Virus record (IMG/VR): IMGVR_UViG_3300022752_000015
Location: 148,805-212,804 of that record
DNA: 64,000 nucleotides
Reading direction: 5' to 3' (one strand)
The notes below the pieces were generated by a model, which saw only the letters and a list, made by a program, of their open reading frames with translations, was not told the DNA's origin and made no database searches. Shown here piece after piece: positions 33,950 through 64,000 of this stretch. A program made the position numbers and the translations under genes. The stretch's first letter is position 1. Every line of letters starts with the position of its first letter.

Positions 33950-36900
33950 ATGCTACGAATTGCGCATACAGCAGACGTGCACTGGCGTGGGCTTAGTCGA
34001 CATGATGAATATCGAGAGATATTTTCTGCTTTTATAAATGACTGTAAGAAGAGCCGCGTCGACCACATCTTCATTGGTGGTGATATCTTTCATACAAAAA
34101 CATCAGGAATTTCTCCTGAATACATCAACCAACTAACGTGGTGGCTAAATGCCATGTCTGAAGTTGCAGTGGTGCACATCATATTGGGTAACCATGATGG
34201 TAACCTAACTAATCTTTCTAGGCAAGACGCAGTTTCTCCGATTGTTGATGCAATGAAAAATGATCGGATAAAGCTCTACAAGAAAAGTGGTACTTACGAA
34301 TTTTCTCCTGGATACAATTGGTGTGTTTTTAGTCTCTTTGACGAAGAAGGTTGGAAAGATGTAAAACCAGTCCCAGGAATGATCAACATCGCGTGTTTCC
34401 ATGGATCAGTAAGAGGATGCGTAACGGAAACAGGATGGGACATAACAGAAGGCATCAGCACTGATTTTTTCAATGAATATGACTTTGTATTTCTAGGTGA
34501 CATACACAAACGACAAATGTTAGCCTACAGAGATGGAAAGCCTTGGATAGGATTTCCAGGTACACCCATTCAGCAAAACTACGCAGAAGAGTTAGATCAT
34601 GGATATTTGCTTTGGGATATTGGTTCAGCATCCAACTGGGATGTTAAGTTTTGTCAACTTCCTAATGTTAAGCCTTACGTAACGATTGATTGGCAAGAGA
34701 ATCATGAAAAGTTAATCAACGAAGCTTTGCTTTATCCAAAGCAGTCAAGATTTCGTATTAGATCTAACGTACCAATGTCACAAGGTGACATTCAGACGAT
34801 TTCTAATCAACTGAAAACTACATTTCAAGCAACGGAAGTTACTTTTAAAACAGACTGTAAAGTAGAGACGAAAAAAATCTCAACGTCAGATGTTGTAATA
34901 GAGAAATCTGATATTAGATCTAATGAAGTGATCTTATCTCTTTTGCGTTCTTATGCAAAAGAAAACAAATATTCTAACGTAAACTGGGAAGCGGTAGAAA
35001 ATGATGTAAAAAAGTATCTTTCTTTGGTCACAACGACGGATGATTTAGCTAGAGGATCTTCATGGTCTCTTAAACAGTTGAAATGGGATAACATTTTTGC
35101 TTATGGCGAAGGCAATGAGATAGATTTTTCAAACTTGAATGGAATAGTAGGAATTTTTGGTCCCAACAGGATTGGAAAATCTTCGATTATAGGCACAATC
35201 ATGTATTCTTTATTCAACACGACCGATAGAGGATCCATGAAGAACATTTACGTTTGTAACGTAAGAAAGCCTTACTGTTCATCCAGGGCAATATTTGAAC
35301 ACAACGGTAAATCTTATGTTGTAGAAAGGCAAACGACAAAACAGCTGAATAAAAAAGGCGGAGTAAGTGCTTCAACAGCTCTTAACCTTTTTAAGATTAA
35401 TGACGATGAAGCAGAAGATCTAGGCGGCGAGCAAAGAACAGACACTGAAAAGATCATTAGATCGTTGTTAGGATCTCCTGATGACTTCTTGCTGACTTCT
35501 TTTTCTGCACAAGGAGAAACCAACGCATTCATTGCATTATCATCAGCCAAAAGAAGATCATTGTTGTCTAGATTTCTAGATTTAGATGTCTTTGATAAAA
35601 TGTACGAAAATTGCAACAAAGAGCTAAATGGATTTAAAGCAAGGTTAAAGAATTACCCAGAAAAAGATTGGGATGCCTTGAAGAAACAAGGAGAAGATCT
35701 TTGTATAGACCTTCAAAAAAAGATTGAAGATCTGCAGATCAAAATATCTGATACTCAAAATTTGCTAACGGACGTCAAGTACAAGCTGTCTTTGCATAAA
35801 GATCTAAAGCCAGTAACAAAAATTCAGCTTGAAGCTCAAGAGAAAAAAGTTTCTTCGCTAGAAAAGCAAGCGCAAGAATGTTCTTCTTATATCGATTCAT
35901 TAAAAGCAGAAATATCATCTTTAACTTCAAAACTTGAAACTGTCAATTCTTTTATTGAAAGTGAAGACATTGATGAACTTAAAACCAAACTTACCGCAAT
36001 AGATTCTATCGAAAAATCTATCACAAGTCTAAAACATTCTTACGAGTTAGAAACTGCTACTTTAAAACAACAACAAAAATCTCTTGCGTTGTTGGATGAA
36101 GTCCCTTGTGGTGATGAATACCCCACTTGCAAATTCATCAAAGATGCTCACTTAGATAAGTCAAAATTTCAAAATCAAAAAGAAAAAGAAGCCAATATAA
36201 AAGCATCTCTTGACAAGGCAATCAACTCTTTAAATTTGTTAGATAAAAATTCCATAATTTCAAAAATCTCTAAATATGAAAAAGCTGTTGGTTTATTGTC
36301 TAACATCAAATTGGAAATCTCTAAGAAAGAAACAGAAATTGAAAAGTGCAAATCTTCCTGCGAGATTTGTTTAGAGAACTTAAAAGAAGCAAAGACCAAG
36401 TTAGTTGACATTCAAAAGGCTTTAAAAAATAATGAAAATTATGAGGTTGTTGCCTTACGTTCAAAATTAGAAGAATTATCTAGTATTGCTAGAGATCATG
36501 ACGATGAAAAGATACGATTAGCGACTCAGCATGGAAGAGCTTTATCTGATCTAGAAAAATTGAAATCTGAAAAAGATTCTAGAGAGAGTTTGATTCGTGA
36601 GATGAAATCGACGGAAATGATATGCGATGCCTTTTCAAAAAAAGGTCTTCCTTTAATGATCACGAAAACTCAGCTTCCTGTCATCAATCAAGAGATTTCA
36701 AAAATTTTACAAGGTATCGTAGATTTTACAGTAGAACTTGAAAATGATGATGAAACAGACTCTACGGAAATATACATCAACTATGGAGACAGCAGGAGGA
36801 TAATTGAGCTATGTTCAGGAATGGAAAAAACTATCTCATCAATTGCAATTAGAGTAGCCTTAGTTAATATTTCAACTCTTCCAAAATTGGATATGTTTAT

Positions 36901-37087
36901 AATCGACGAAGGATTTGGAACGTTAGACGAATCTGGAGTGGAAGCATGTAGTAGATTGCTCAATAGCCTGAAGAGGTATTTTAAGACAATTTTGATGATT
37001 ACCCATGTGGATGGAATAAAAGATATGGCAGATCATATTATCGAAATAACCAAGCAAGAAAAAGATTCTAAGGTGGTTGTCACATGA
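33950..37087 (+). CDS. Fused SbcD/Mre11 nuclease and SbcC/Rad50 ATPase (gp47-gp46-like)
   Basis: DVH, GGD, GNHD and GDIH phosphoesterase motifs; Walker A GPNRIGKS, coiled coil, CGDEYPTC hook, CSGME signature, IDEGFGTLD, ITH. Confidence 0.9.
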   Translation: MLRIAHTADVHWRGLSRHDEYREIFSAFINDCKKSRVDHIFIGGDIFHTKTSGISPEYINQLTWWLNAMSEVAVVHIILGNHDGNLTNLSRQDAVSPIVDAMKNDRIKLYKKSGTYEFSPGYNWCVFSLFDEEGWKDVKPVPGMINIACFHGSVRGCVTETGWDITEGISTDFFNEYDFVFLGDIHKRQMLAYRDGKPWIGFPGTPIQQNYAEELDHGYLLWDIGSASNWDVKFCQLPNVKPYVTIDWQENHEKLINEALLYPKQSRFRIRSNVPMSQGDIQTISNQLKTTFQATEVTFKTDCKVETKKISTSDVVIEKSDIRSNEVILSLLRSYAKENKYSNVNWEAVENDVKKYLSLVTTTDDLARGSSWSLKQLKWDNIFAYGEGNEIDFSNLNGIVGIFGPNRIGKSSIIGTIMYSLFNTTDRGSMKNIYVCNVRKPYCSSRAIFEHNGKSYVVERQTTKQLNKKGGVSASTALNLFKINDDEAEDLGGEQRTDTEKIIRSLLGSPDDFLLTSFSAQGETNAFIALSSAKRRSLLSRFLDLDVFDKMYENCNKELNGFKARLKNYPEKDWDALKKQGEDLCIDLQKKIEDLQIKISDTQNLLTDVKYKLSLHKDLKPVTKIQLEAQEKKVSSLEKQAQECSSYIDSLKAEISSLTSKLETVNSFIESEDIDELKTKLTAIDSIEKSITSLKHSYELETATLKQQQKSLALLDEVPCGDEYPTCKFIKDAHLDKSKFQNQKEKEANIKASLDKAINSLNLLDKNSIISKISKYEKAVGLLSNIKLEISKKETEIEKCKSSCEICLENLKEAKTKLVDIQKALKNNENYEVVALRSKLEELSSIARDHDDEKIRLATQHGRALSDLEKLKSEKDSRESLIREMKSTEMICDAFSKKGLPLMITKTQLPVINQEISKILQGIVDFTVELENDDETDSTEIYINYGDSRRIIELCSGMEKTISSIAIRVALVNISTLPKLDMFIIDEGFGTLDESGVEACSRLLNSLKRYFKTILMITHVDGIKDMADHIIEITKQEKDSKVVVT

Positions 37088-51402: not shown

Positions 51403-51405
51403 CAG

Positions 51406-51477
51406 CGATCCCAGGGGGAATTGAACCCCCGCAAGCGCCTTGAAAGGGCACTGTCCTAACCTCTAGACGATGGGACC
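51406..51477 (-). tRNA. tRNA-Glu(TTC), CCA not encoded
   Basis: Minus strand reads GGTCCCA...GTGCC-CTTTCAA-GGCGC...GGTTCAATTCC...TGGGATC-G and folds as a cloverleaf. Confidence 0.92.
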
Positions 51478-51811: not shown

Positions 51812-53149
51812 TCAAACTATGTTTAAGAATTTTTGACCGACCTCAGCAATTTTAGGATCGACATCGTTGATGCTTCTCTCGCGGATAAAGACAGGAAATC
51901 TGACTTTTCCGTCCTTCGTCAATCCATTCGACGTGGAAGGTTCAGGTTGACCTTCTAGCTCAACCACTTTTCCAATCCATGAGTCAGGATCCATTCCGAT
52001 CTCAGCTTTTAATGCGTCGGTGAAACCTCCACCCACACGTGTGATGATCCCGTTTGGCATCATGACCTCAAATCCACCCCACAGACCTTCTCTCTTTGAA
52101 CCTCTATTTCCCATGTAGTGACCGACAATCATACCTTCATAGGTGGCAATCGGCTTCATCTTTTTAACTGAGTTAGATCTCTTAAACGAATAAAGAGCCG
52201 AGAGATCCTTGATCATGATTCCTTCGAATCCGCCTTCTAGATTTTTTGAATAAAAATCCAATAGTTCACCTGAATCATTAACGGTGATGCCTTTAACATG
52301 TGCTACCGAAGAGTTATTGACCTGCGAAACTAGTTCTTCGGTCAGTTCAATTCGAGTCAGCAGCTCCATCGAACTTTCTTGATCGTGCCAATCAGAAAAA
52401 GGCATGGAATCGAACACATGAAACATGATGTTAGAATCATCCTTGCCTCGTTTATGAGACATCATCACAGACGCAGACTCGTTCCAATCGGAACCCATTG
52501 CCTCACCATCCAAGACAAAGTTGTCCCATGGTGCGTCTTCGATCACTTTCTTAATCTTCGGAAGCGTCTCTAGAACCGTACCACTTCTGGTAAACATGGT
52601 GGCTAGACCATCTTTCTTCACGATGATGCATCGCAATCCGTCCAACTTAGGTTCAACGCGGACAGGATAACTGATGCTGTCGTTGATGATGATTCCTGAA
52701 TTAAGATCGAATCTTGTCTGCAAGCTCTCAGCTAACTGCACTGAAAACCCGACGATAGAATTCGGCCAAATCTTATTGACCGTGGTGGACTGCACGCCAC
52801 ATCGCAAATTTTTCAATAGAATTCTTAGACACCACTTCTGCTGGCTTGCCGTCAAACGCGAGAAAAAAGAAACAACGGCATCTTTTGCAGCATTTCCTGT
52901 GATGTTTCGTTGAGCCAACGAATGATTTACAAAATCTAGAAAACTATCAATGACTTCATCATCATCTTCTCCAACATCACGAGAAGAAGGCATCTTAAAC
53001 TTGTTAACAAAAAAGTTTGTATAAGGATCACCAACAGATACAAAAATCCTTTGCAAGAGTTGATTGTTGCTATGAGTGTCCAACAGTTCTTCTTTAAAGA
53101 TTCGAGAATTGTTAGACTCTAGAGATTCTAGAATATCGATGACTGTCAT
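51812..53149 (-). CDS. ATP-dependent DNA ligase
   Basis: EPKLDGLR (motif I), LDGE, FD, EGIMIK, KMKP and RFPVF motifs. Confidence 0.93.
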   Translation of the reverse strand: MTVIDILESLESNNSRIFKEELLDTHSNNQLLQRIFVSVGDPYTNFFVNKFKMPSSRDVGEDDDEVIDSFLDFVNHSLAQRNITGNAAKDAVVSFFSRLTASQQKWCLRILLKNLRCGVQSTTVNKIWPNSIVGFSVQLAESLQTRFDLNSGIIINDSISYPVRVEPKLDGLRCIIVKKDGLATMFTRSGTVLETLPKIKKVIEDAPWDNFVLDGEAMGSDWNESASVMMSHKRGKDDSNIMFHVFDSMPFSDWHDQESSMELLTRIELTEELVSQVNNSSVAHVKGITVNDSGELLDFYSKNLEGGFEGIMIKDLSALYSFKRSNSVKKMKPIATYEGMIVGHYMGNRGSKREGLWGGFEVMMPNGIITRVGGGFTDALKAEIGMDPDSWIGKVVELEGQPEPSTSNGLTKDGKVRFPVFIRERSINDVDPKIAEVGQKFLNIV

Positions 53150-55570: not shown

Positions 55571-55652
55571 TTTTTTCTCACTTTCGTGCGTTCATCAAAT
55601 CCAGGGAACAAATTCTTTTTATACCATGCAACATTAACATTGCACTGGAAGA

Positions 55653-56588
55653 TTAAAGGGGCACATCAAATTTCTTAGGCATCTCGAGGACAGCGAGATT
55701 TTTCATCTTCGCCTCCACCTCTAGATCCACTGCATCGCGCCGCAGGCGCTCGAGCTGCACCGCAGGAATATAATGGATCATGTCGCTGTGCTTGCGCCGC
55801 TCGGTGAAAGATCCACCCTCCATGCCTGGCTCAGTGTTGCTGATGTGTTGCAGGGGTTTCACACCTTTAGGCCACGTCTCATCGGCTGCGTCCGCAGCCT
55901 CTGCGCCGTCCAATCCATCGTCGTTGAAAACATGATGATGCGAATCCCACACGATCGGCACACCCGTCTCCATCGACACCGGCAACAGATCCACCAACGA
56001 ATAGCACGTCTCGCAATTCTCCAGCGTCAATCGCGATCGACTAGCCTCAGGCAATGACCGAATCGCGTCGATCAGCCTCGTCTGCCGATCCGCCTTACCA
56101 CCATGCACGTTGATCGCGGCGTACGGACTCCGCGGCATCCCCATCGAATCAAACATCCACGCGTGATGCTCGAGCTCGACGATCGACTTCTCAACCACCG
56201 AGTCAGAATCCGACGACAACACGCAGAACTGACCCGGATGCGTCGTCAACCGAACGCCATGCTTCCTCGCCACCTCACCACACATCGCCAGCTCTCGCTT
56301 GAGAACATCGTTGTCCCACAATCCCCGAGGCACGCGATCATTCAACGGAAACATGGCGCTCGACACGCGAAACAACCGCACGCCACTCGCTGCCACCTTC
56401 CGTAACACGTCTCGCAACATTCGAGCATTGTGAAGGTACAACGATCGAATCGCATCCTCAGAGTATGCACCCCGCTCATATCGACCCAATTGCAACGTCT
56501 TCTCCTCCAACTCGTTGATGACCTGCAACTTGCCGCTCCGCGGCGCATTCTCGTGCCTAATCCAATGACAACAGACACCTAGTGCCAT
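55653..56588 (-). CDS. uvsE: UV-damage endonuclease
   Basis: FRVSS.MFP, HPGQF..LSS, NVHGG, LENCE, DSHHH, HSD and EVEAKMK motifs. Confidence 0.92.
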   Translation of the reverse strand: MALGVCCHWIRHENAPRSGKLQVINELEEKTLQLGRYERGAYSEDAIRSLYLHNARMLRDVLRKVAASGVRLFRVSSAMFPLNDRVPRGLWDNDVLKRELAMCGEVARKHGVRLTTHPGQFCVLSSDSDSVVEKSIVELEHHAWMFDSMGMPRSPYAAINVHGGKADRQTRLIDAIRSLPEASRSRLTLENCETCYSLVDLLPVSMETGVPIVWDSHHHVFNDDGLDGAEAADAADETWPKGVKPLQHISNTEPGMEGGSFTERRKHSDMIHYIPAVQLERLRRDAVDLEVEAKMKNLAVLEMPKKFDVPL

Positions 56589-56654
56589 AAGCTTGTGTAT
56601 ACCTTAATCCCTTAAGGCCACTTGTACAACAAACCACGTCCTCTATGCACCACG

Positions 56655-56690
56655 GGCCACATGAATTATTCCTGGATAATTCATGTGGCC
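56655..56690. repeat. Perfect 15-bp inverted repeat
   Basis: GGCCACATGAATTAT-TCCTGG-ATAATTCATGTGGCC. Confidence 0.85.
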
Positions 56691-56718
56691 TTCTACACAG
56701 ACGATTATTACAGTTTAT

Positions 56719-57093
56719 TCAGGTGCCACCGAAGGCGTCATCCACCACGTCCATCATGGTGCGATCGTCTCGAGAATCTCCCTTCAAGACGTCAATCTTC
56801 GTACGTGCCGCGGCGGCGGCCCAGCGCACGACCACCTCTCCTGGCTCTCTGAGAGACAACTCGACGAATGCCCCCGTCTCAGGATCGCTCAACCTCGCAA
56901 TGGTTCCATCACGCATCCCATCTAGATCAGGACCCATGTCGTACACGAGATCAGGATTGGTCGCGGCCTCGTCTGCCAATATCTCCATCACCGGCTCAGC
57001 CACAAGCCTCCACTGAATCTCTTCGGCCCCTCCGGTCAACGACTCAAACTCTTCTCTAATGATCTGTTTCAATCTCGGCAACGTCAACTTCAT
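56719..57093 (-). CDS. Small protein with MKLTLPRLKQIIREE N-terminus
   Basis: GGAG SD before ATG 57093; shared motif. Confidence 0.7.
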   Translation of the reverse strand: MKLTLPRLKQIIREEFESLTGGAEEIQWRLVAEPVMEILADEAATNPDLVYDMGPDLDGMRDGTIARLSDPETGAFVELSLREPGEVVVRWAAAAARTKIDVLKGDSRDDRTMMDVVDDAFGGT

Positions 57094-57368
57094 ACTAACT
57101 CCAGTACATATATATATCACGCTATACATCGTCTACCGGAGAAGTCGACGAAACGGTGCCAACAATGCCCCAATGATCAATCGAAACACCGAAGCCACGA
57201 ACATCCTCTCAAACATCCGACCATATTTCATCCGCATCTCATCACCTCAGCACCCATGGTACGTCGCTCCAGCTGCGAAGAACAACGGTCATTTCGACGC
57301 AAAAAATTTCCCGAGAAATTTTCGAGCACCACAACAGCTCCAGAAAATCCGCGGAGCCGGAACTCAGT

Positions 57369-57551
57369 TCACAACCTTTTTAGAAAGGCTATGTACTCGA
57401 AGTCAACCGTCCCGTCGTTGCACAGGAAGATTCCCTCATCCGGCTGTTCATCGAGATGATACAGGAACACCAAGACTCGATCCAAGATCTCTCTCGGTGC
57501 CACGCCATCATCTTCGTAGACGCACAGATCTCCGGGGCTGAGCTTTAACAT
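57369..57551 (-). CDS. Small hypothetical protein
   Basis: 60-aa ORF, same orientation as neighbours. Confidence 0.4.
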   Translation of the reverse strand: MLKLSPGDLCVYEDDGVAPREILDRVLVFLYHLDEQPDEGIFLCNDGTVDFEYIAFLKRL

Positions 57552-57878
57552 GCTTATAAATAGGCATGTGCCCCCACGAGTGTGGGTAATGACCGTTTCA
57601 ATCTCAAAATTTCTCGAGATTTGCGCGCGGGTTTAGCGCTCCCCGGAGGCCCCAAAAACCCCACAGAAAATGCCCCTTTTGGGGGCGGGGCCGGGGCCCC
57701 ATTTTAGGGGCCTAAAGAGGGGCCCTTCGAGGGGCCCTTGCAAGGGGGCTGCCCCTCCGCCCGATTGCTGTCTCCTCGGGCCCCCTTGTATTTCAACCTT
57801 GCAGCAGGCCCCACCGCAGAACCCAGCCGATCGCTGCTCCGATGATTGCTCCTTCGGCGAAGGCCGCCGCGTGATCCT

Positions 57879-58244
57879 TCAGCAGCCCTCCTTGAGGAGT
57901 CGGAAGAACTTCTTCGGAGCCGACGGCCCGATACCGAGCTTGAGGAGGAGGGGGAAGGCCGCAAGCTTCTCGTTGAGCTGCGCCGTCTTCTCCGAGATCT
58001 CGCTGATGAGCGAGCCGTTCGTCGGAGGAGACATGTGCGACCCACCGTCCCTGACGTAGGTGGCGAAGGAGGTGCAGCTCTTGGCGAGCCTCTCGGCGCA
58101 GTCGGCAAGATCCTCGCGCAGCTGGTCGATCTTGCAGGCCGCCTCACGGACCTCCAGGAAGGCGGCCGTGCTCGCGAGGTACATCAGGCCGAGCGACTTG
58201 ATGGTAGCTTCCAGGGTGGACTCGTACTTGCCGGGGTTCTTCAT
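57879..58244 (-). CDS. Array unit protein, 121 aa, hypothetical
   Basis: ATG belongs to element 58242-58280; reads MKNPGKYE... Confidence 0.7.
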   Translation of the reverse strand: MKNPGKYESTLEATIKSLGLMYLASTAAFLEVREAACKIDQLREDLADCAERLAKSCTSFATYVRDGGSHMSPPTNGSLISEISEKTAQLNEKLAAFPLLLKLGIGPSAPKKFFRLLKEGC

Positions 58245-58297
58245 GGTCCTAGTATACCCTTTCTCAAATGAACTTTGCACCGACGGGACGAACTTTT

Positions 58298-58483
58298 TCA
58301 GCCCCACTGTTTGGGGATGGCGAGCCGCAGCTTCTCGAGGATGTCACCGTAGGCGGTCAGTTCCTCGGCATCGAATTCGCTCAAGGCCGCGCGGATCCGT
58401 TTCGCCTCCTCGAGGGAGAGGTAGAGGTTGATGCCGTCTTCCTTGGTGCCGGTGGGGGAGGTGGCGGTCCGGGTGATCTTCAT
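58298..58483 (-). CDS. Array unit protein, 61 aa
   Basis: ATG of element 58481-58519. Confidence 0.7.
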   Translation of the reverse strand: MKITRTATSPTGTKEDGINLYLSLEEAKRIRAALSEFDAEELTAYGDILEKLRLAIPKQWG

Positions 58484-58523
58484 GGTTCTACCTTATCCTG
58501 TTCTGGGGTGACTTTGCACCGGA

Positions 58524-58700
58524 TCAGAGGATGGGATCGACCCCTTCGATCAAGGGGTAGTAGGAGACCTGGATTCCGTGGTAGCCGGCGTCGTAGAGCT
58601 TTTGGGCTTCCTTGACGATTCGCGACTGGCGGACTTGTTTCCGCCCGGGCTTGCCCTTGGGGGTGAAGTAGGCGATCTCGTAGATGGCTTCGTTCTTCAT
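58524..58700 (-). CDS. Array unit protein, 58 aa
   Basis: ATG of element 58698-58736; reads MKNEAIYE... Confidence 0.7.
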   Translation of the reverse strand: MKNEAIYEIAYFTPKGKPGRKQVRQSRIVKEAQKLYDAGYHGIQVSYYPLIEGVDPIL

Positions 58701-58751
58701 GGTCCCAGTATATCCTTTCCTCGTTGAACTTTGCACCGATCCGCGAACTTT

Positions 58752-58937
58752 TTACACACCCATCTCTTCGAGGGCGTCCTGGCGCAGGATGTCGGTCACC
58801 TCCTCGCGGAGGTCCTTCCGGGCCGCCAGCTCCCAGAGGGAGGCGGTGAGGTTGGCCTGCATCTCGTGGTCGATCTTCCCCGCGGTGAGGAGATCGGTCA
58901 CCTGGGCGATGAGCTGGGCGATGTGTTTGGCGTCCAT
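58752..58937 (-). CDS. Array unit protein, 61 aa
   Basis: ATG of element 58935-58973; reads MDAKHIAQ... Confidence 0.7.
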   Translation of the reverse strand: MDAKHIAQLIAQVTDLLTAGKIDHEMQANLTASLWELAARKDLREEVTDILRQDALEEMGV

Positions 58938-58973
58938 GGCCTCAGTATACCCTTTCGAGGAGGAACTTTGCAC

Positions 58974-59147
58974 TCAGCCGTTGAGCTTTTCGCCGATCCG
59001 GGCCTTGAGTTCCTCGAGGGCGACCCGGTCCCGGAGATCCTTGAGGGCAACCAACTCCTCCTTCCAGTCGGGATCACCGTTGTAGGTCTCGATCTGGGTC
59101 ACGAGTGCCTCATAGAGGCGATTGAGGTCGATCTCGTCGAATTCCAT
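58974..59147 (-). CDS. Array unit protein, 57 aa (not in ORF track)
   Basis: Reads MEFDEIDLNRLYEALV...GEKLNG*; its TGA abuts the next element. Confidence 0.7.
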   Translation of the reverse strand: MEFDEIDLNRLYEALVTQIETYNGDPDWKEELVALKDLRDRVALEELKARIGEKLNG

Positions 59148-59183
59148 GGTTCTACCTTACCTCGTTCAGGTGTGACTTTGCAC

Positions 59184-59354
59184 TCAGTAGGGAAGATTCT
59201 CCAGGTGCTCGATGAGCTTCACCTGGAGCTTGAGGAGCGACCGGTAGTCAGGATCGTCGCGGAGGTCGATGGAGGTGTCCAGACGCATCCTCTCCCGGAC
59301 GGAGTCGAGGCCTTCGAGGATGAGCTTCGTTTCGGAGCGGGAGAGGTGTTCCAT
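59184..59354 (-). CDS. Array unit protein, 56 aa (not in ORF track)
   Basis: Reads MEHLSRSETKLILEGL...ENLPY*; its TGA abuts the next element. Confidence 0.7.
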   Translation of the reverse strand: MEHLSRSETKLILEGLDSVRERMRLDTSIDLRDDPDYRSLLKLQVKLIEHLENLPY

Positions 59355-59394
59355 GGTTCTAGTATACCTCGTTCAGGGGTGACTTTGCACCGAC

Positions 59395-59607
59395 TCAGGC
59401 CCGGTTCAGGATCCGGTCGGCAGCCCGAGCTGTCATGATGTCCCGCCCACCGAGCCCGATTCGGTTGGCCTTGCGGACCGCGGCGGCGATGGAGGTCGAC
59501 CCGAAGTACCAGCCGACCGGGATGCAGTCTTCCTTGGAGAAGCCGTAGTAGGCCACGGCGGCGTAGAGGTAGGTGCGACGTGAGGGCTTCTTGGAGGTGG
59601 TCTTCAT
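59395..59607 (-). CDS. Array unit protein, 70 aa, basic
   Basis: ATG of element 59605-59643. Confidence 0.7.
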   Translation of the reverse strand: MKTTSKKPSRRTYLYAAVAYYGFSKEDCIPVGWYFGSTSIAAAVRKANRIGLGGRDIMTARAADRILNRA

Positions 59608-59648
59608 GGTTTTACCTTATCCTGTTCGTGGTTGACTTTGCACCGGGT

Positions 59649-59735
59649 TCAGGCGGCCATCATCCACCAGGCCGCGAAGGCCGTGGAAGCGACGGTGACG
59701 ATGGCTCCGAGGATGTCAGCTGCGGCGTTCTTCAT
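59649..59735 (-). CDS. Array unit peptide, 28 aa, single hydrophobic helix
   Basis: Reads MKNAAADILGAIVTVASTAFAAWWMMAA* from element 59733-59771. Confidence 0.6.
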   Translation of the reverse strand: MKNAAADILGAIVTVASTAFAAWWMMAA

Positions 59736-59753
59736 GGTCCTAGTATATCCTAT

Positions 59754-59930
59754 TCAGATGTGACTTTGCACCGACGCAGGAGGAACCAACTCCTCCGGCA
59801 CCACATTCTCTGGAGTCAAGACGTGACCACGGTAAAATGGCTGGAGCAACACGATGGCTCCCTCGACGGTCCGCGCCCGGACACACTCGCCGGTCTCGAC
59901 GTAGACCCACCACTTCGTCTTGGTCTTCAT
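59754..59930 (-). CDS. Array unit protein, 58 aa
   Basis: Reads MKTKTKWWVY...; its 3' end runs into the next element. Confidence 0.65.
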   Translation of the reverse strand: MKTKTKWWVYVETGECVRARTVEGAIVLLQPFYRGHVLTPENVVPEELVPPASVQSHI

Positions 59931-59995
59931 GCCACCAGTATATCCTTTCCCGGCGGAACTTTGCACCGACCTGGGAACTTTTTCTCAGATCACCC

Positions 59996-60076
59996 AGGAT
60001 GCCCTTGGGGAGGCCGGAGGCAATTCGACCTAGGTTACCCCATTCCTAGATCCAAGAACCTCCCCAAGGGCATCCT
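59996..60076. repeat. Hairpin element copy 1 (18-bp arms, conserved core GACCTAGGTTACCCCAT)
   Basis: AGGATGCCCTTGGGGAGG (59996-60013) pairs with CCTCCCCAAGGGCATCCT (60059-60076); core at 60027-60043. Confidence 0.85.
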
Positions 60077-60093
60077 AGGGGTTCAGGCGTGGG

Positions 60094-60837
60094 TCAGAAC
60101 TTCTCTGCCGGGACCCACTGGACGTTACCTGCCGAGTCCTTCACCCCTGCCCGGGCGTTCCACTTGCCGCGGTACTTGGAGACGCCGATCCAGAAGACCT
60201 TGCCGGTGAAGCCGTCGACTGTGACCGTGGTGCCCTTGGCAGGGATCCGGGCCAGCTGACCCTCAGCCACCGCCTTCTCGGCCTGGAGCTTGGCGTCACG
60301 CTTAGCCTGGCGGGCGTCCTTCTTCGCCTTCTCGGCGGCGGCGATGGCAGCCTGCTCAGCGCGTTTGGCCGCCCGTTCCGCCTCGATGCGGGCCATCCGG
60401 GCCGTGTGGAATGCCTCCCAGGCGGCACATCCGTCGAGCATCTCAGGACCACCGTGGAGGAGCTGCATGTCGAAGGGATCGACCGTGGCCGACAGCGAGT
60501 AGCCGTTGCGGTCGGAGAAGAGGTTGGTGCAGTCCACCCAGGCGAACTGTTCGTGGACCTCGAGATCGCGGACCTTGTCGGCATCCCACTTGAGGGCATC
60601 GATGTAGGCGAGGATCCGCTCACCGGCGTAGTGGTGCGGGCTGGGAGGGACGTTGCAGGTGCCGAGCCAGACGAGGGCCCAGGTGCACTCAGTCGAGCGG
60701 TGGTCCGAGTAGTCGAGGGTGTCCGACCAGTTGCGGGTCTCCGTCGTCTTCTCGATCCGCAGGACGCGGTGCTGGAAGAAGACCTCCGACGTGGAGGGGC
60801 CGGGACCGTAGGCGTAGCTCTTCTTGATGATCGGCAT
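60094..60837 (-). CDS. Array unit protein, 247 aa, with Ala/Lys helix and C-terminal SH3-like domain
   Basis: ATG of element 60835-60873; C-terminus contains KGTTVTV..TGKVFWIG. Confidence 0.75.
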   Translation of the reverse strand: MPIIKKSYAYGPGPSTSEVFFQHRVLRIEKTTETRNWSDTLDYSDHRSTECTWALVWLGTCNVPPSPHHYAGERILAYIDALKWDADKVRDLEVHEQFAWVDCTNLFSDRNGYSLSATVDPFDMQLLHGGPEMLDGCAAWEAFHTARMARIEAERAAKRAEQAAIAAAEKAKKDARQAKRDAKLQAEKAVAEGQLARIPAKGTTVTVDGFTGKVFWIGVSKYRGKWNARAGVKDSAGNVQWVPAEKF

Positions 60838-60888
60838 GGTTCTACCCTATCCTGTTCAGGGTCGACTTTGCACCACCGCCGCACTTTT

Positions 60889-61131
60889 TCAGTCGTCGTC
60901 CACCCCGAAGGTGGAGAGGGGCTCTTCCTCCTCTTCGTCCTCACCCAACTCTTCCTCCTCCTCGTCCTCGTCGATCTCTGCATCCTCCTCCTCGAGGAAC
61001 CCCTCACCCACTGCCATCTCGGCTACGTCGGCCTCCGACATGAAGGTCAGGCAGGCCCTCACGAGCACCTCGGCGTCCAAGGCACCCTCTTCCATCATCT
61101 CCAGCAGCTTGTTCGTAACTCGTCGCGTCAT
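60889..61131 (-). CDS. Array unit protein, 80 aa, extremely acidic
   Basis: ATG of element 61129-61167; about 40% Asp/Glu. Confidence 0.75.
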   Translation of the reverse strand: MTRRVTNKLLEMMEEGALDAEVLVRACLTFMSEADVAEMAVGEGFLEEEDAEIDEDEEEEELGEDEEEEEPLSTFGVDDD

Positions 61132-61170
61132 GTTGTTACCTTATCTTGTCGGGGGTTGACTTTACACTGC

Positions 61171-61557
61171 TCAGGGGAGGGGCTTGAACTCGGGACCCTT
61201 GCCGAAGACCTCACGGTCTGCGTAGTGCCAGCTGTAGGTAGTCCCTCGCTCGTCCCCCGGCCGAAAGAGGTAGACGAACTCGTAACCACCGTCGTCGAAG
61301 CGGATGCTGCTCGCCTGGGTGTAGGTGGCGATGTCGAGTTCCTCACCACGGTCGCGGTGGTAGGCCTGCGTGTAATCCAGGTCCTCACCGAGCGACGACA
61401 AGCAACCGAGCGCCACGAGGTCGAGCACCTGACGGACCGTCGTGTAGTGTGCTTTGAGGGTGGCACCGACGCCTTTGAGGTAGCCGTCGTGGTGGCAGTA
61501 GACGCCGGTGACAGTGCCGTCGAGGTTCTGGATGCCGATGAAAGAGCGAGTGGACAT
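61171..61557 (-). CDS. Phage hypothetical protein (MSTRS.IG...YCH.DGY...VG..L..HY type), 128 aa
   Basis: AGGAG SD before ATG 61557; the motif pattern recurs in phage proteins, function unknown. Confidence 0.75.
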   Translation of the reverse strand: MSTRSFIGIQNLDGTVTGVYCHHDGYLKGVGATLKAHYTTVRQVLDLVALGCLSSLGEDLDYTQAYHRDRGEELDIATYTQASSIRFDDGGYEFVYLFRPGDERGTTYSWHYADREVFGKGPEFKPLP

Positions 61558-61594
61558 GAGGTTCTCCTGGACGAGGGTTGGTGGCCGGATTGGT

Positions 61595-61621
61595 TCAGAT
61601 GCCGATCTTGATCGTTTCCAT
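61595..61621 (-). CDS. 8-aa leader micro-ORF (METIKIGI)
   Basis: ATG of element 61619-61657, with a stop at codon 9. Confidence 0.4.
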   Translation of the reverse strand: METIKIGI

Positions 61622-61651
61622 GGTTCTACTCTATCAGGTCGTTGAGGAACT

Positions 61652-62383
61652 TTACACTGCCTCTGTGCGACGAATTGCGACCGTCGGGGGAAGGGTACCA
61701 TCCCCACACCCGTACACCCGGATCGAATAGTTGGCGATTTCCTTGGGGTAACCCCTTCGGTCAGCCCGGCGGATGTGACGGAATCGATAGGTCCCAGGAT
61801 CCGGATACTTCCCAGTCATAGAAATGTAGGTCGGGGTGAGACGTAGAGTGCGGGAGCTTCCTCCGATGCGGAGACCCTTGAAGGCCGCATCGCCGAGCGT
61901 GTCATAGATCTGCTTACCAACGAGCTGCTCTGCAGTCCGTTGTGTCCTCTCGACCACCTGTGCGGGTGACTCCATGGTCAAAGTGATCTTCTGGGGCAAC
62001 ATTGTTGTCAGCATCTCCCCCAGCATGGCAACCATCGAGACCATGTTTTCCCGCCGCTTCAACGTCTCCAGGTCCATGTCGCCACCTGAGGTCGCCACTG
62101 CGATGCGGAGGTAGTTATCCAACACCATGGCACCTTCCTCATTGAGCTGTGCCCCCTTCGGGTCCGAGTTGTAGACGACGACCAGCGTGACGGAGGGGTT
62201 GGACTCGTGCCACGCGCTCCTCGTGGGATCCAGGTTGAAGTCGTACCGAATCCCCGTCGAGCCCTCCGTCACCTCCCGAGCGAGCACGTCTTGGTTGTAC
62301 TTGTTCATGTGCGCGACCACACCGTGAGAGCCGATGATGGCCTTGGCGGTGCGGAGGGCTTCGATCCGGGGTGTGGCGTCCAT
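61652..62383 (-). CDS. Array unit protein, 243 aa
   Basis: ATG of element 62381-62419; its TAA lies inside the GTGTAAAG of the next element. Confidence 0.75.
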   Translation of the reverse strand: MDATPRIEALRTAKAIIGSHGVVAHMNKYNQDVLAREVTEGSTGIRYDFNLDPTRSAWHESNPSVTLVVVYNSDPKGAQLNEEGAMVLDNYLRIAVATSGGDMDLETLKRRENMVSMVAMLGEMLTTMLPQKITLTMESPAQVVERTQRTAEQLVGKQIYDTLGDAAFKGLRIGGSSRTLRLTPTYISMTGKYPDPGTYRFRHIRRADRRGYPKEIANYSIRVYGCGDGTLPPTVAIRRTEAV

Positions 62384-62419
62384 GGTTCTACCTTACCTCA
62401 TTCGTCGTGCGCTTTGCAC

Positions 62420-62638
62420 TCAGGTCACACCCCGCCGTGACAGTTCGATGCCGAGGAGCTTGTAGGCCGTGCGCCAGTTGCGGTGGCGGGCCCGGGCGAG
62501 GACTTGGGTGCCGGTGTCCACCTCGACGTGGAAGTCTCCCTTGACGCGGACGCTGCGGACCTCAAGGGGCGTGCCCTCACTGACGCAGAAGGAAGCAAGT
62601 TCGAGAACCTTTGCCTTGGGAGAGGAGTTGCGCTTCAT
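62420..62638 (-). CDS. Array unit protein, 72 aa, basic
   Basis: ATG of element 62636-62674; its TGA abuts the next element. Confidence 0.7.
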   Translation of the reverse strand: MKRNSSPKAKVLELASFCVSEGTPLEVRSVRVKGDFHVEVDTGTQVLARARHRNWRTAYKLLGIELSRRGVT

Positions 62639-62679
62639 GGTTCTAACTTACCTTGTTTGAGGTTGACTTTGCACTGCCT

Positions 62680-62952
62680 TCAGCCAACCGCGAGAGAAAG
62701 TGCGCAGTAGCGGCCGTCGGGCAGAGTACCTTCGTAGTTGAGGCTGACGTTACCCTCGCCATCGTCGGCGATCTCGACGAAGTTGAAGGCGACAACCTTG
62801 CCCGTCCGGTGGCTGCGGACTGCGACCTTGGCCGGAGCACGACCACTTTGGGGGAAGTCAATGTGGTCGCTGACCGACCCCATACCGTGAGCGGCCTTGG
62901 CGTTGTACCAGTCGAACTTCGAACCGTCGAGGATGATCGGGAAGGTGTTCAT
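62680..62952 (-). CDS. Array unit protein, 90 aa
   Basis: Reads MNTFPIILDG... from element 62950-62988. Confidence 0.7.
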   Translation of the reverse strand: MNTFPIILDGSKFDWYNAKAAHGMGSVSDHIDFPQSGRAPAKVAVRSHRTGKVVAFNFVEIADDGEGNVSLNYEGTLPDGRYCALSLAVG

Positions 62953-63005
62953 GGTCTCAGTATATCCTTTCGAGGTTGAACTTTGCACTGGATGGGTTGG
63001 GGTTT

Positions 63006-63344
63006 TCAGCCGCCGTCGGCCATGCGCATGGCGGCGTAGGCGTCGGCCGGTTTGGCGGGCTTCTTGCGCTTGGCCTTGCGTTGAGCTGCCCGATCCGCGG
63101 CCGCCGAGGCGGCCGGGTTGCAGACGGCCTTCTCCTTGCCGACGGAGTAGAGGATGTTGTCCCCTGGTTGGAATGGGCCGCTGAGGACCACGACGTCGCC
63201 GTCCTCGAGCTGTCCTGCTCGGGCGGCCATTGCGAGTTTGTCGAAGGCTGCGCGGGCTGCCGGCTCGCTGAGGAAGACGTGCTGGGCGGCGGAGCCTTCG
63301 TAGGAGACCAGGACCGAGACGACGTAGATTCCGATGTTCTTCAT
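63006..63344 (-). CDS. Array unit protein, 112 aa
   Basis: Reads MKNIGIYVV... from element 63342-63380; basic C-terminal tail. Confidence 0.7.
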   Translation of the reverse strand: MKNIGIYVVSVLVSYEGSAAQHVFLSEPAARAAFDKLAMAARAGQLEDGDVVVLSGPFQPGDNILYSVGKEKAVCNPAASAAADRAAQRKAKRKKPAKPADAYAAMRMADGG

Positions 63345-63384
63345 GGTTGTAGTATACACTTTCGAGGTTGAACTTTGCACGGAC

Positions 63385-63594
63385 TCAGTACAACTTTCGG
63401 CCGTGGGACAGGACCTCCGCCGCTCGAGCGAATGCCCTCGACAGAATCTCACATTCGGCACGGTTGAGGTACAGGGTGGCGGTGCCTCCGGAATCCTTGT
63501 CCGGACACCGGCCCTTGTGCTCGTCTCCCCGGACCGTCTGGACCAGGTCGAGGCGGAGGATGTCGTTGATGATGTCGAGGGGGTCGCGGTCCAT
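63385..63594 (-). CDS. Array unit protein, 69 aa
   Basis: Reads MDRDPLDII... from element 63592-63630. Confidence 0.7.
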   Translation of the reverse strand: MDRDPLDIINDILRLDLVQTVRGDEHKGRCPDKDSGGTATLYLNRAECEILSRAFARAAEVLSHGRKLY

Positions 63595-63648
63595 GGTCCT
63601 AGTATACCCTTTCTGCTGGGAACTTTGCACCGGGTGGAGAACTTTTTT

Positions 63649-63837
63649 TCAGACGTCCGAAGCGATCTGCGCCAGGAAGTGGGCGAGCGTCGAGGCATCG
63701 TCGTTCTGGAGGGTGATCGAGAAGCTCGGCCCGAACACGATCCGCGTCGTGTAAGGCAGCGGACCTTCCTCCACCTCGATGCGGTACTCGCGGGAGGTGT
63801 CTGCGTCGACGACCGTGAGCTTCTTGATGTGATCCAT
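63649..63837 (-). CDS. Array unit protein, 62 aa
   Basis: Reads MDHIKKLTV... from element 63835-63873. Confidence 0.7.
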   Translation of the reverse strand: MDHIKKLTVVDADTSREYRIEVEEGPLPYTTRIVFGPSFSITLQNDDASTLAHFLAQIASDV

Positions 63838-63904
63838 GGTCCTAGTATACCCTTTCCACTGTGAACTTTGCACTGACGGTCGCGCTTTTTTTCGCGATCC
63901 CCTG

Positions 63905-63983
63905 GGATGACCCAGGAGAGGTCGGGGAATGCCGGACCTAGGTTACCCCATCCGACCCCACGGTAGCCTCTCCTGGGTCATCC
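63905..63983. repeat. Hairpin element copy 2 (17-bp arms, same core)
   Basis: GGATGACCCAGGAGAGG (63905-63921) pairs with CCTCTCCTGGGTCATCC (63967-63983); core GACCTAGGTTACCCCAT at 63935-63951. Confidence 0.85.
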
Positions 63984-64000
63984 TCAGGCCCAGGACCTGG

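What the first reader, a model, noticed from the sequence alone, without database searches (positions are those of the whole stretch)
59996..63983. Two copies of a fixed-geometry hairpin element with covarying arms and an invariant 17-nt core
Seen: copy 1 (59997-60075) and copy 2 (63905-63983) share the same layout of 17-bp arm, 13 nt, GACCTAGGTTACCCCAT, 15 nt, 17-bp inverted arm. The left arms differ at 4 positions (GGATGCCCTTGGGGAGG vs GGATGACCCAGGAGAGG), and every change is compensated in the right arm. The 13- and 15-nt linkers are largely divergent in sequence but identical in length. Both copies sit in non-coding gaps just upstream of an A-tract plus 39-bp element, and copy 1 splits the array 9 elements to 9. 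Inference: pairing and spacing are under selection, so this is a folded ssDNA or RNA element that presents a conserved core. Candidates are a recombination or nicking site, an ejection or replication signal, a structured ncRNA or terminator, or a hairpin promoter (the minus-strand core ATGGGGTAACCTAGGTC contains a -10-like TAACCT). I do not recognise it as a known family.
Basis: partly seen in the sequence, partly recalled or inferred. Interest (0 to 1): 0.75.

Follow-up and report, generated by a model that had tools for sequence, protein, structure and literature searches.

The report
Conserved long hairpin between phage gene cassettes
Two of a small family of about 79-base hairpins that sit between a gene's stop codon and the next promoter in a GC-rich, fast-shuffling island of a freshwater jumbo phage; they most likely fold in the messenger RNA to mark the ends of transcript blocks, which makes them an elaborate variant of the promoter/stem-loop cassettes known from T4-type phages.

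Summary
Both copies (59997-60075, 63905-63983) have perfect 17-bp arms and a 45-nt interior.

The window is the end of a roughly 280-350 kb T4-like jumbo phage from lake metagenomes. The contig end beside copy 2 is an assembly break.

I collected 27 distinct copies from relatives and metagenomes.
- Arm pairing is kept through double changes in 6 of 17 pairs, and the stem extends to 19 bp.
- Non-Watson-Crick positions are G.U on the gene-sense strand 34 times, against 6 on the other strand.
- The sense strand folds more stably in 23 of 27 copies.
- The "invariant 17-nt core" is not invariant. Only GGTWACC, usually GGGGTAACC, is family-wide.
- The interior is 45 nt in most copies but also 44, 43 or 34.

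Every copy lies 7-40 nt upstream of a promoter-like box. All types except C and the hybrid start 0-18 nt after the TGA stop of a real gene. The family has 4-5 copies per genome, all in one 35-kb GC-rich mosaic island, and none in 185,579 bacterial and archaeal genomes or in Rfam.

Best reading (0.42): an mRNA-sense stem-loop marking transcript-block ends, the stem-loop half of a PeSL-like cassette. It is not a canonical terminator. A single-stranded-DNA recombination or fragile site is the main rival.

The parts
59997..60075 (-). Hairpin copy 1 (type A1, class II arms). Arms are 59997-60013 and 60059-60075. The central GGTTACC is 60033-60039, with the centre base at 60036. On the minus (gene-sense) strand the centre reads GGGGTAACC.
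   Evidence: 82 bits on the minus strand, 55 on the plus strand
63905..63983 (-). Hairpin copy 2 (type A2, class I arms). Arms are 63905-63921 and 63967-63983. The central GGTTACC is 63941-63947.
   Evidence: 87 bits on the minus strand, 53 on the plus strand
60094..60837 (-). 247-aa gene of unknown function. Its TGA stop (60094-60096) lies 18 nt upstream of hairpin copy 1 in the direction of transcription. Homologues in other phages are followed by the orthologous hairpin.
   Evidence: no Pfam or PDB match
59928..59987 (-). Promoter-like module directly downstream (in the sense direction) of copy 1. Read on the minus strand it is TGAGAAAAAG (A-tract), GTGCAAAGT box (59958-59966), TATACT, 6 nt, then ATG (59928-59930) of a 58-aa gene (59754-59930).
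63835..63895 (-). Promoter-like module directly downstream (in the sense direction) of copy 2. It has an A7 tract (63886-63892), the box (63865-63873), and the ATG (63835-63837) of a 62-aa gene (63649-63837).
58242..63880 (-). Array of 18 promoter-like modules, each running from a TGA/A-tract to the ATG of a small gene. On the plus strand the start codons read CAT at 58242, 58481, 58698, 58935, 59145, 59352, 59605, 59733, 59928, 60835, 61129, 61619, 62381, 62636, 62950, 63342, 63592 and 63835.
   Evidence: contig junctions in other lake metagenomes fall at these modules
55600..64000 (.). Left part of a GC-rich island (53-66% GC) inside a genome of 31-47% GC. In the relative G005 the island is internal and about 35 kb long.

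Best explanation
The element is a cis-acting stem-loop that folds on the gene-sense strand, most likely in the mRNA.

Anatomy: a perfect 17-19 bp basal stem, a 41-45 nt interior that is type-specific and only partly paired, and an apical GG-GUAA-CC motif.

Position: at the end of a block of small, individually promoted early or accessory genes. It starts 0-18 nt after the last gene's TGA and lies 7-40 nt before the A-tract and promoter box of the next block.

Inferred function: it defines and protects the 3' end of the upstream transcripts and insulates the next promoter. It would do this by acting as an exonuclease barrier and/or a double-strand-RNase processing site, as the intercistronic RNase III hairpins of T7 do. 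The conserved apex would be the contact for a host or phage factor.

Together with the promoter module it forms a PeSL-like cassette boundary, so it also travels and recombines with cassettes.

Shown: anatomy, conservation, pairing, strand bias, position and mosaicism. Inferred: that the folded molecule is RNA, and what it does.
For: - Pairing: 27 distinct copies, 97.8% of cells paired, 6 of 17 pairs with double changes, covariation score reached by 0 of 500 shuffles. RNAalifold adds two more covarying pairs, CG/UG/UA.
- Strand bias: non-Watson-Crick cells are 34 G.U on the sense strand against 6 on the antisense strand. The sense fold is more stable in 23 of 27 copies, by 5.0 kcal/mol on average. 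The covariance model scores the sense strand 25-35 bits higher.
- Spacing: the 5' spacing from arm to core is nearly constant, and almost all length changes are on the 3' side.
- Position: types A1, A2, B, D, E and F all start 0-18 nt after the TGA of a real ORF of 63 to more than 230 codons. A promoter box follows at 7-40 nt in every copy.
- Decay where transcription is unlikely: type C sits between divergent promoters with no upstream gene. Its arms are decayed there, with 3 mismatches in G003, G004 and G005 and about 7 in G001.
- Inner helix: in type A2, GGGG/CCCC changes to GAGG/CCTC.
- Deep conservation: the hairpin stays behind the same gene down to about 51-55% protein identity, with new compensated arms.
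- Context matches the PeSL description in PMC2839356 and PMC4122927. The phage has a T4-like portal and head protein. The island is mosaic, and cassette junctions fall at the promoter modules.
Against: - No transcript data could be laid on it. Only assembled contigs were available, and RNA runs hold only 7-17% of the words.
- No U-tract follows the stem on either strand, and the scan finds no terminator there. Canonical intrinsic termination is therefore unlikely.
- Only about 1 junction in 9 carries the hairpin. G005 has a hairpin-less allele with the same flanking genes, so a single copy is dispensable.
- Type C and the hybrid H persist where no sense transcript is evident.
- The strand bias could also come from single-stranded DNA of the same strand, or partly from base composition.
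- The middle of the interior has no family-wide structure.
- The phage encodes no RNase III.
Confidence: 0.42

Rival explanations
1. A DNA-level structure. The sense strand folds when it is single-stranded, for example as lagging-strand template or displaced strand. It then acts as a recombination hotspot or fragile site, or as a replication signal, that drives cassette exchange in the island. The phage's Mre11/Rad50-type (SbcCD-like) nuclease could process it.
For: - Arms occur in discrete classes that are swapped as blocks between orthologous copies. Copy 1 has class II arms in G000 and class I arms in G003 and G005, with a similar interior.
- A hybrid with one arm of each class exists in two samples.
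- The type C interior is inverted relative to the others.
- Homology blocks between genomes break within about 30-80 nt of hairpins.
- Type C lies in a divergent, apparently untranscribed gap.
- The phage encodes an SbcCD-like nuclease.
- G.T wobble and sense-strand bias fit single-stranded DNA as well.
Against: - No tyrosine recombinase, serine recombinase or Y1 HUH enzyme was found in G000 or in the 84%-complete G005.
- Most population-level junctions are at the promoter modules, not at the hairpins.
- The order of types along the genome is stable across relatives.
- A 45-nt spacer makes cruciform extrusion from duplex DNA unlikely (established DNA biophysics).
- The tight placement after stop codons is not explained.
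Confidence: 0.24
2. A double-stranded DNA binding site for a regulator of the adjacent promoter, or a roadblock. Two arm half-sites and a central palindrome are read by a symmetric protein complex.
For: - The inverted-repeat arms sit 62 bp apart centre to centre, with a palindrome exactly midway.
- The site is always upstream of a promoter box in one polarity.
- The one large length change is 11 nt, about one helical turn.
Against: - Two arm classes coexist within one genome, yet the two arms of an element almost always match. A shared protein would not require this.
- G.U-type one-sided changes and the sense-only extra pairs are unexplained.
- In type F the centre is no longer equidistant from the arms.
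- The distance from hairpin to box varies from 7 to 40 nt.
Confidence: 0.1
3. A processed small RNA or decoy. The hairpin is cut out of the transcript, and its conserved apex (GG-GUAA-CC, a GNRA-type tetraloop in 21 of 27 copies) binds or titrates a host or phage factor. It does not act merely as a 3' end.
For: - The apex is the only family-wide conserved sequence besides the arms.
- The stem is long enough to be cut by a double-strand RNase.
- The type A apex resembles the -10-to-start segment of the island's own promoters, an observation made by eye on sequence.
Against: - Types B, C and H have GGUUACC in the sense strand, not a GNRA loop.
- No RNA data are available.
- One copy is lost without other change in G005.
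Confidence: 0.1
4. A selfish miniature palindromic (MITE- or REP-like) element with no function for the phage.
For: - It has terminal inverted repeats.
- There is a presence/absence polymorphism with short imperfect direct repeats at the flanks of copy A2.
- Several sequence types share the same ends.
Against: - There are only 4-5 copies per roughly 280-kb genome. All are in the island, in a conserved order, in one polarity relative to promoters, and right after stop codons.
- No copies occur in 185,579 bacterial and archaeal genomes.
- No transposase was found.
- No consistent target duplication is seen.
- Arms and apex are conserved while the interior diverges, which indicates purifying selection.
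Confidence: 0.06

Closest known systems
PeSL (promoter-early stem-loop) regulatory cassettes of T4-type phages (Arbiol et al. 2010, PMC2839356; Comeau et al. 2014, PMC4122927)
   Same: - A stem-loop lies between an upstream stop codon and an AT-rich tract, promoter and start codon.
- The cassettes are concentrated in a hyperplastic region of small ORFan genes of a T4-like phage.
- The repeated module is the junction at which cassettes are exchanged among related phages.
   Different: - PeSL stems are short G-run/C-run terminator hairpins found at most junctions. Here the hairpin is 79 nt, with a 17-19 bp stem, a 41-45 nt interior and a conserved apex, no U-tract, and it occurs at about 1 junction in 9.
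- The promoter is not sigma-70-like.
- The promoter geometry (-10, 6 nt, ATG) suggests leaderless mRNAs.
Intercistronic RNase III processing hairpins of phage T7 early mRNA (own knowledge)
   Same: Long, imperfect hairpins with shared sequence features that lie between cistrons just after stop codons. Several occur per early region. They define and stabilise mRNA ends.
   Different: No sequence similarity. T7 sites have an internal loop that directs single-strand cleavage, whereas here the basal stem is perfect. Cleavage is untested.
REP/BIME and other intergenic palindromes that stabilise upstream mRNA (own knowledge)
   Same: Intergenic hairpins after stop codons, with compensated stems.
   Different: REPs are 20-40 nt, have hundreds of copies, and are chromosomal and linked to RAYT transposases. 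This family is confined to the phages, has few copies, and was found with no transposase.
Integron attC sites (own knowledge)
   Same: A cassette-associated imperfect palindrome whose structure is conserved rather than its sequence, and which folds on one strand.
   Different: There are no R''/L''-L'/R' boxes, no integron integrase, and the element is not present at every cassette.

Membership tests
PeSL cassette (T4-type phages) | Lies in a hyperplastic, mosaic region of a T4-type phage genome | tested here: met
   T4-like portal, head protein and SbcCD-like nuclease by PHROGs. The island is mosaic between relatives and in lake metagenomes.
PeSL cassette (T4-type phages) | Stem-loop immediately upstream of an AT-rich tract, promoter and start codon of the next gene | tested here: met
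   Hairpin, then 7-40 nt including an A-tract, then the box, -10 and ATG, in all copies.
PeSL cassette (T4-type phages) | Sigma-70-like -35/-10 early promoter | tested here: not met
   No sigma-70-type match at any of the 18 modules. The conserved GTGCAAAGT box replaces a -35.
PeSL cassette (T4-type phages) | Short G-run/C-run stem-loop acting as terminator, present at most junctions | tested here: not met
   The stem is 17-19 bp with a 41-45 nt interior and no U-tract. Only 2 of 18 junctions in the window carry it. Terminator activity was not tested.
Intrinsic (Rho-independent) terminator | GC-rich stem, 3-8 nt loop, U-tract within a few nt after the stem | tested here: not met
   No site was called at either element. 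The sense strand has an A-tract after the stem, and the other strand has its T-tract before the stem.
Any Rfam 15 family | Covariance-model score at or above the gathering threshold | tested here: not met
   Only a tRNA passes in the window. At the elements there are only microRNA-precursor models at 20-26 bits against thresholds of 57-100.
Integron attC | Integron-type tyrosine recombinase nearby and conserved R/L boxes | tested here: not met
   No PF00589 match in G000 or G005. The arms lack GTTRRRY-type boxes.
MITE / REP-RAYT / IS200-IS605 ends | Dispersed multicopy distribution, target duplications, cognate transposase | tested here: not met
   4-5 copies, all in one island. No Y1 transposase. 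No copies in bacterial genomes. Flanking direct repeats are seen at one copy only.
N4-type hairpin promoter | 5-7 bp stem with a 3-nt loop, read by a virion single-subunit RNA polymerase | tested here: not met
   The stem is 17-19 bp. PF00940 gave no match, but that search had no positive control.
RNase III processing site (T7-like) | Cleavage by RNase III within a duplex of roughly two helical turns between cistrons | not testable with these tools
   The duplex length (17-23 bp) and intercistronic position are compatible. The phage has no RNase III of its own.

The most novel reading that the evidence does not exclude
The hairpin is a previously undescribed, phage-specific structured signal. 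Its conserved apex (GG-GUAA-CC at a fixed distance from a perfect stem) would be read by an unknown host or phage factor. That factor would either end or process transcripts without a U-tract, or nick or recombine the folded strand. The same element would then both punctuate expression and catalyse cassette exchange in a compositionally foreign 'accessory island' of a jumbo phage.
Probability: 0.25. Interest if true: 0.75.

Novelty: new variant of a known kind. Interest (0 to 1): 0.5.

Why it matters
How large phages shuffle and express their accessory (host-takeover and anti-defence) genes is an open question. PeSL cassettes are the only described mechanism, and their stem-loop has never been shown to be more than a terminator. 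This island has unusually clean modules that run exactly from stop codon to start codon. It also carries a distinct, selected hairpin with measurable covariation and natural with/without alleles, which makes the role of the stem-loop directly testable. The family could also be added to RNA-motif libraries for annotating uncultured jumbo phages.

Tried and rejected
- Chimeric assembly as the cause of the GC jump: rejected. G001 and G005 are collinear across it.
- Physical genome end at copy 2: rejected. G004, from the same metagenome, overlaps the last 127 nt at 100% and continues. G003 and G005 are contiguous there.
- Regular 3.5-4.2 kb spacing: rejected.
- Known RNA family: none.
- Restriction-site avoidance of GGTWACC, CCWWGG or CCWGG: none.
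- Mini-ORF inside the hairpin: stops differ between types, so rejected by inspection.
- Family-wide helices in the interior: none. Only type-specific ones exist.
- Read ends and junctions at the hairpin: only assembled contigs were available, so there was no read-end information. RNA runs hold too little to judge.
- Function of the 247-aa upstream gene: no Pfam, PDB or atlas lead.
- Megablast against deposited phage genomes: no match.
- A looser DNA pattern scan gave mostly chance hits.


Full report
**What is there.** The two elements are as described. Window 59997-60075 and 63905-63983 each have perfect 17-bp inverted arms around 45 nt, with the same 17-mer in the middle. Either strand folds far better than shuffled sequence, with z about -5. 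The palindrome GGTTACC lies exactly at the centre of each element.

**Where the window comes from.**
- The window is the last 64 kb of a 212.8-kb virus contig from a lake metagenome.
- PHROG matches to portal protein, major head protein, an SbcCD-like nuclease and DNA ligase indicate a T4-like jumbo phage.
- Most of the genome is 31-47% GC, but the last 8 kb rise to 53-66%.
- This is not a chimera. A 38-kb relative (G001) is collinear across the switch.
- A 278-kb relative (G005, 88-97% identical) shows the GC-rich stretch as an internal island of about 35 kb.
- The contig end 17 nt after copy 2 is an assembly break. Another contig of the same metagenome (G004) overlaps the last 127 nt at 100% identity and continues.

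**The island.**
- It consists of dozens of small genes, all diverging from one point.
- Each gene is preceded by a conserved module that reads, in the gene direction: TGA-GAAAAAGT, about 10 nt, GTGCAAAGT, about 15 nt, a TANNNT hexamer, 6 nt, ATG.
- The module therefore spans exactly from a stop codon to the next start codon. Its fixed -10-to-ATG distance suggests leaderless transcripts (inference).
- None of the modules looks like a sigma-70 promoter, and there are no canonical terminators.
- In four other lake metagenomes, contig junctions relative to this window fall at these modules. Homology blocks between relatives also break there.
- This is the behaviour described for PeSL cassettes of T4-type phages (PMC2839356, PMC4122927).

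**The hairpin family.** Pattern scans of viral and metagenome contigs, scripts and a covariance model gave 27 distinct copies.
- Each genome has 4-5 copies, all in the island, in a conserved order of interior types (D, A1 or E or F, A2, B, C).
- The model finds nothing else in 278 kb of G005.
- 185,579 bacterial and archaeal genomes hold only unpaired chance matches.
- Every copy is followed, in one polarity, by a promoter box 7-40 nt away.
- In types A1, A2, B, D, E and F the hairpin starts 0-18 nt after the TGA of a real upstream gene.
- Type C sits in the gap between the divergent promoters, with no upstream gene.

**What is conserved.**
- The arms and the centre are conserved. The 17-mer as a whole is not.
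- The centre is GGTWACC, which reads GGGGTAACC on the sense strand in 21 of 27 copies.
- The rest of the interior differs even between orthologous copies. The copy behind the 247-aa gene has unalignable 5' halves in G000, G003, G001 and L045.
- The 5' distance from arm to centre is nearly constant. The 3' distance is 19, 18, 17 or 8 nt.
- The interior has no family-wide helices, only type-specific ones. These include a 13-bp inner helix in type B and a compensated GGGG/CCCC to GAGG/CCTC change in type A2.

**Pairing and strand.**
- 97.8% of arm cells pair.
- 6 of 17 pairs show changes on both sides. The covariation score exceeds all 500 shuffles and all slid controls.
- Two further pairs (CG/UG/UA) extend the stem to 19 bp.
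- A more distant phage, about 70% nucleotide identity, carries a third arm version with three more compensated positions.
- Over the 19 pairs, non-Watson-Crick cells are G.U on the gene-sense strand 34 times and on the other strand 6 times.
- The sense strand folds more stably in 23 of 27 copies.
- The structure therefore forms on the sense strand, either as RNA or as that strand of DNA.

**Caveats on the covariation.**
- The two main arm versions behave as blocks. Orthologous copy 1 has one version in G000 and the other in G003 and G005. One element, seen in two samples, has one arm of each version and four mismatches.
- Part of the 'compensation' is therefore arm exchange, not point mutation.
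- My scans fixed most arm positions in one arm, so variation there could only appear as mismatch.
- The synteny-anchored search partly removes this bias. It shows the hairpin retained down to about 51-55% protein identity of the upstream gene. In other lineages the hairpin is decayed (L193), very divergent (L197), replaced by a promoter plus tRNA-Asn (L195, L196), or absent (L198, L199, L201).

**Dispensability.** G005 lacks copy A2 but keeps the same upstream gene, promoter and downstream gene. The gene end there retains what looks like the last bases of the right arm, so this is probably a deletion.

**Interpretation.**
- The placement after stop codons, sense-strand pairing with wobble, constant 5' spacing, and decay of the arms in the one position that is apparently untranscribed (type C) favour an RNA stem-loop that marks the end of multi-gene transcript sets.
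- With no U-tract it is not a canonical terminator. A role as a 3'-end barrier or as a double-strand-RNase processing site, as in T7 early mRNA, fits better.
- The phage has no RNase III of its own.
- The same facts, apart from the stop-codon placement, fit a single-stranded-DNA structure that stimulates recombination. Arm swapping, the hybrid, the inverted type C interior and the SbcCD-like nuclease point that way. However, no tyrosine recombinase, serine recombinase or HUH (Y1) enzyme was found.
- I could not obtain read-level RNA or DNA data, so the choice between these readings remains inference.

**Verdict.** This is a real, selected family confined to this group of phages and not yet catalogued. 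It is best filed as an elaborate variant of the stem-loop part of PeSL-like cassettes. Its mechanism is unproven.

Noticed in passing
window 55600-64000 (G005: about 45-80 kb): A roughly 35-kb island of 52-66% GC inside a jumbo phage genome that is otherwise 31-47% GC. The junction is conserved in relatives, and the promoter-like box is almost confined to the island. The reason for the composition is unexplained.
   Followed up: partly
window 58242-63880, 18 modules: A conserved module runs exactly from a TGA stop (inside TGAGAAAAAGT) to the next ATG, with the -10-like hexamer a fixed 6 nt before the ATG. This suggests leaderless mRNAs. Contig junctions in four other lake metagenomes fall at these modules, which is natural evidence of cassette shuffling.
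   Followed up: partly
window 61556-61657 (minus strand): One module is followed by a conserved 8-codon mini-ORF (METIKIGI, 61595-61621). Next comes a classical AGGAG ribosome-binding site and a gene of about 126 aa starting at 61556. This mini-ORF is also present in G001, G002 and G003. So both leaderless-type and Shine-Dalgarno-type starts occur in the island.
   Followed up: partly
L010:17784-17857; L009:15463-15542; G004 59600-59673: A second, unrelated long hairpin with 16-17 bp perfect arms and a 40-48 nt interior lies inside the coding sequence of a conserved 162-aa gene. Its interior contains a reverse-oriented promoter -10/ATG-like string.
   Followed up: no
L045:8147-8224 and L133: A hybrid hairpin with a class I-like left arm and a class II right arm (4 mismatches) was found in two independent samples. 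It looks like an intermediate of arm exchange.
   Followed up: partly
L195:1920-2050 and L196: In one lineage, the place behind the 247-aa gene homologue holds a variant promoter box plus a tRNA-Asn(GTT) gene instead of the hairpin.
   Followed up: partly
window 33950-37087 (+): A single 1045-aa ORF matches both the SbcD-like and SbcC-like subunits of the palindrome-specific nuclease (gp47/gp46-type), apparently fused.
   Followed up: no
window 51405-51477 (-); 51812-53149 (-): A tRNA-Glu(TTC) gene and an ATP-dependent DNA ligase gene lie just outside the island.
   Followed up: no
L010:8960-9802 (-), L010:13374-14138 (+), L009:13020-14138 (+): Beyond the window's end, the island encodes a Sir2-family protein, a KaiC/RecA-like ATPase, a MoxR-type AAA ATPase and a weak IrrE/M78-like peptidase match, among ORFans.
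   Followed up: no
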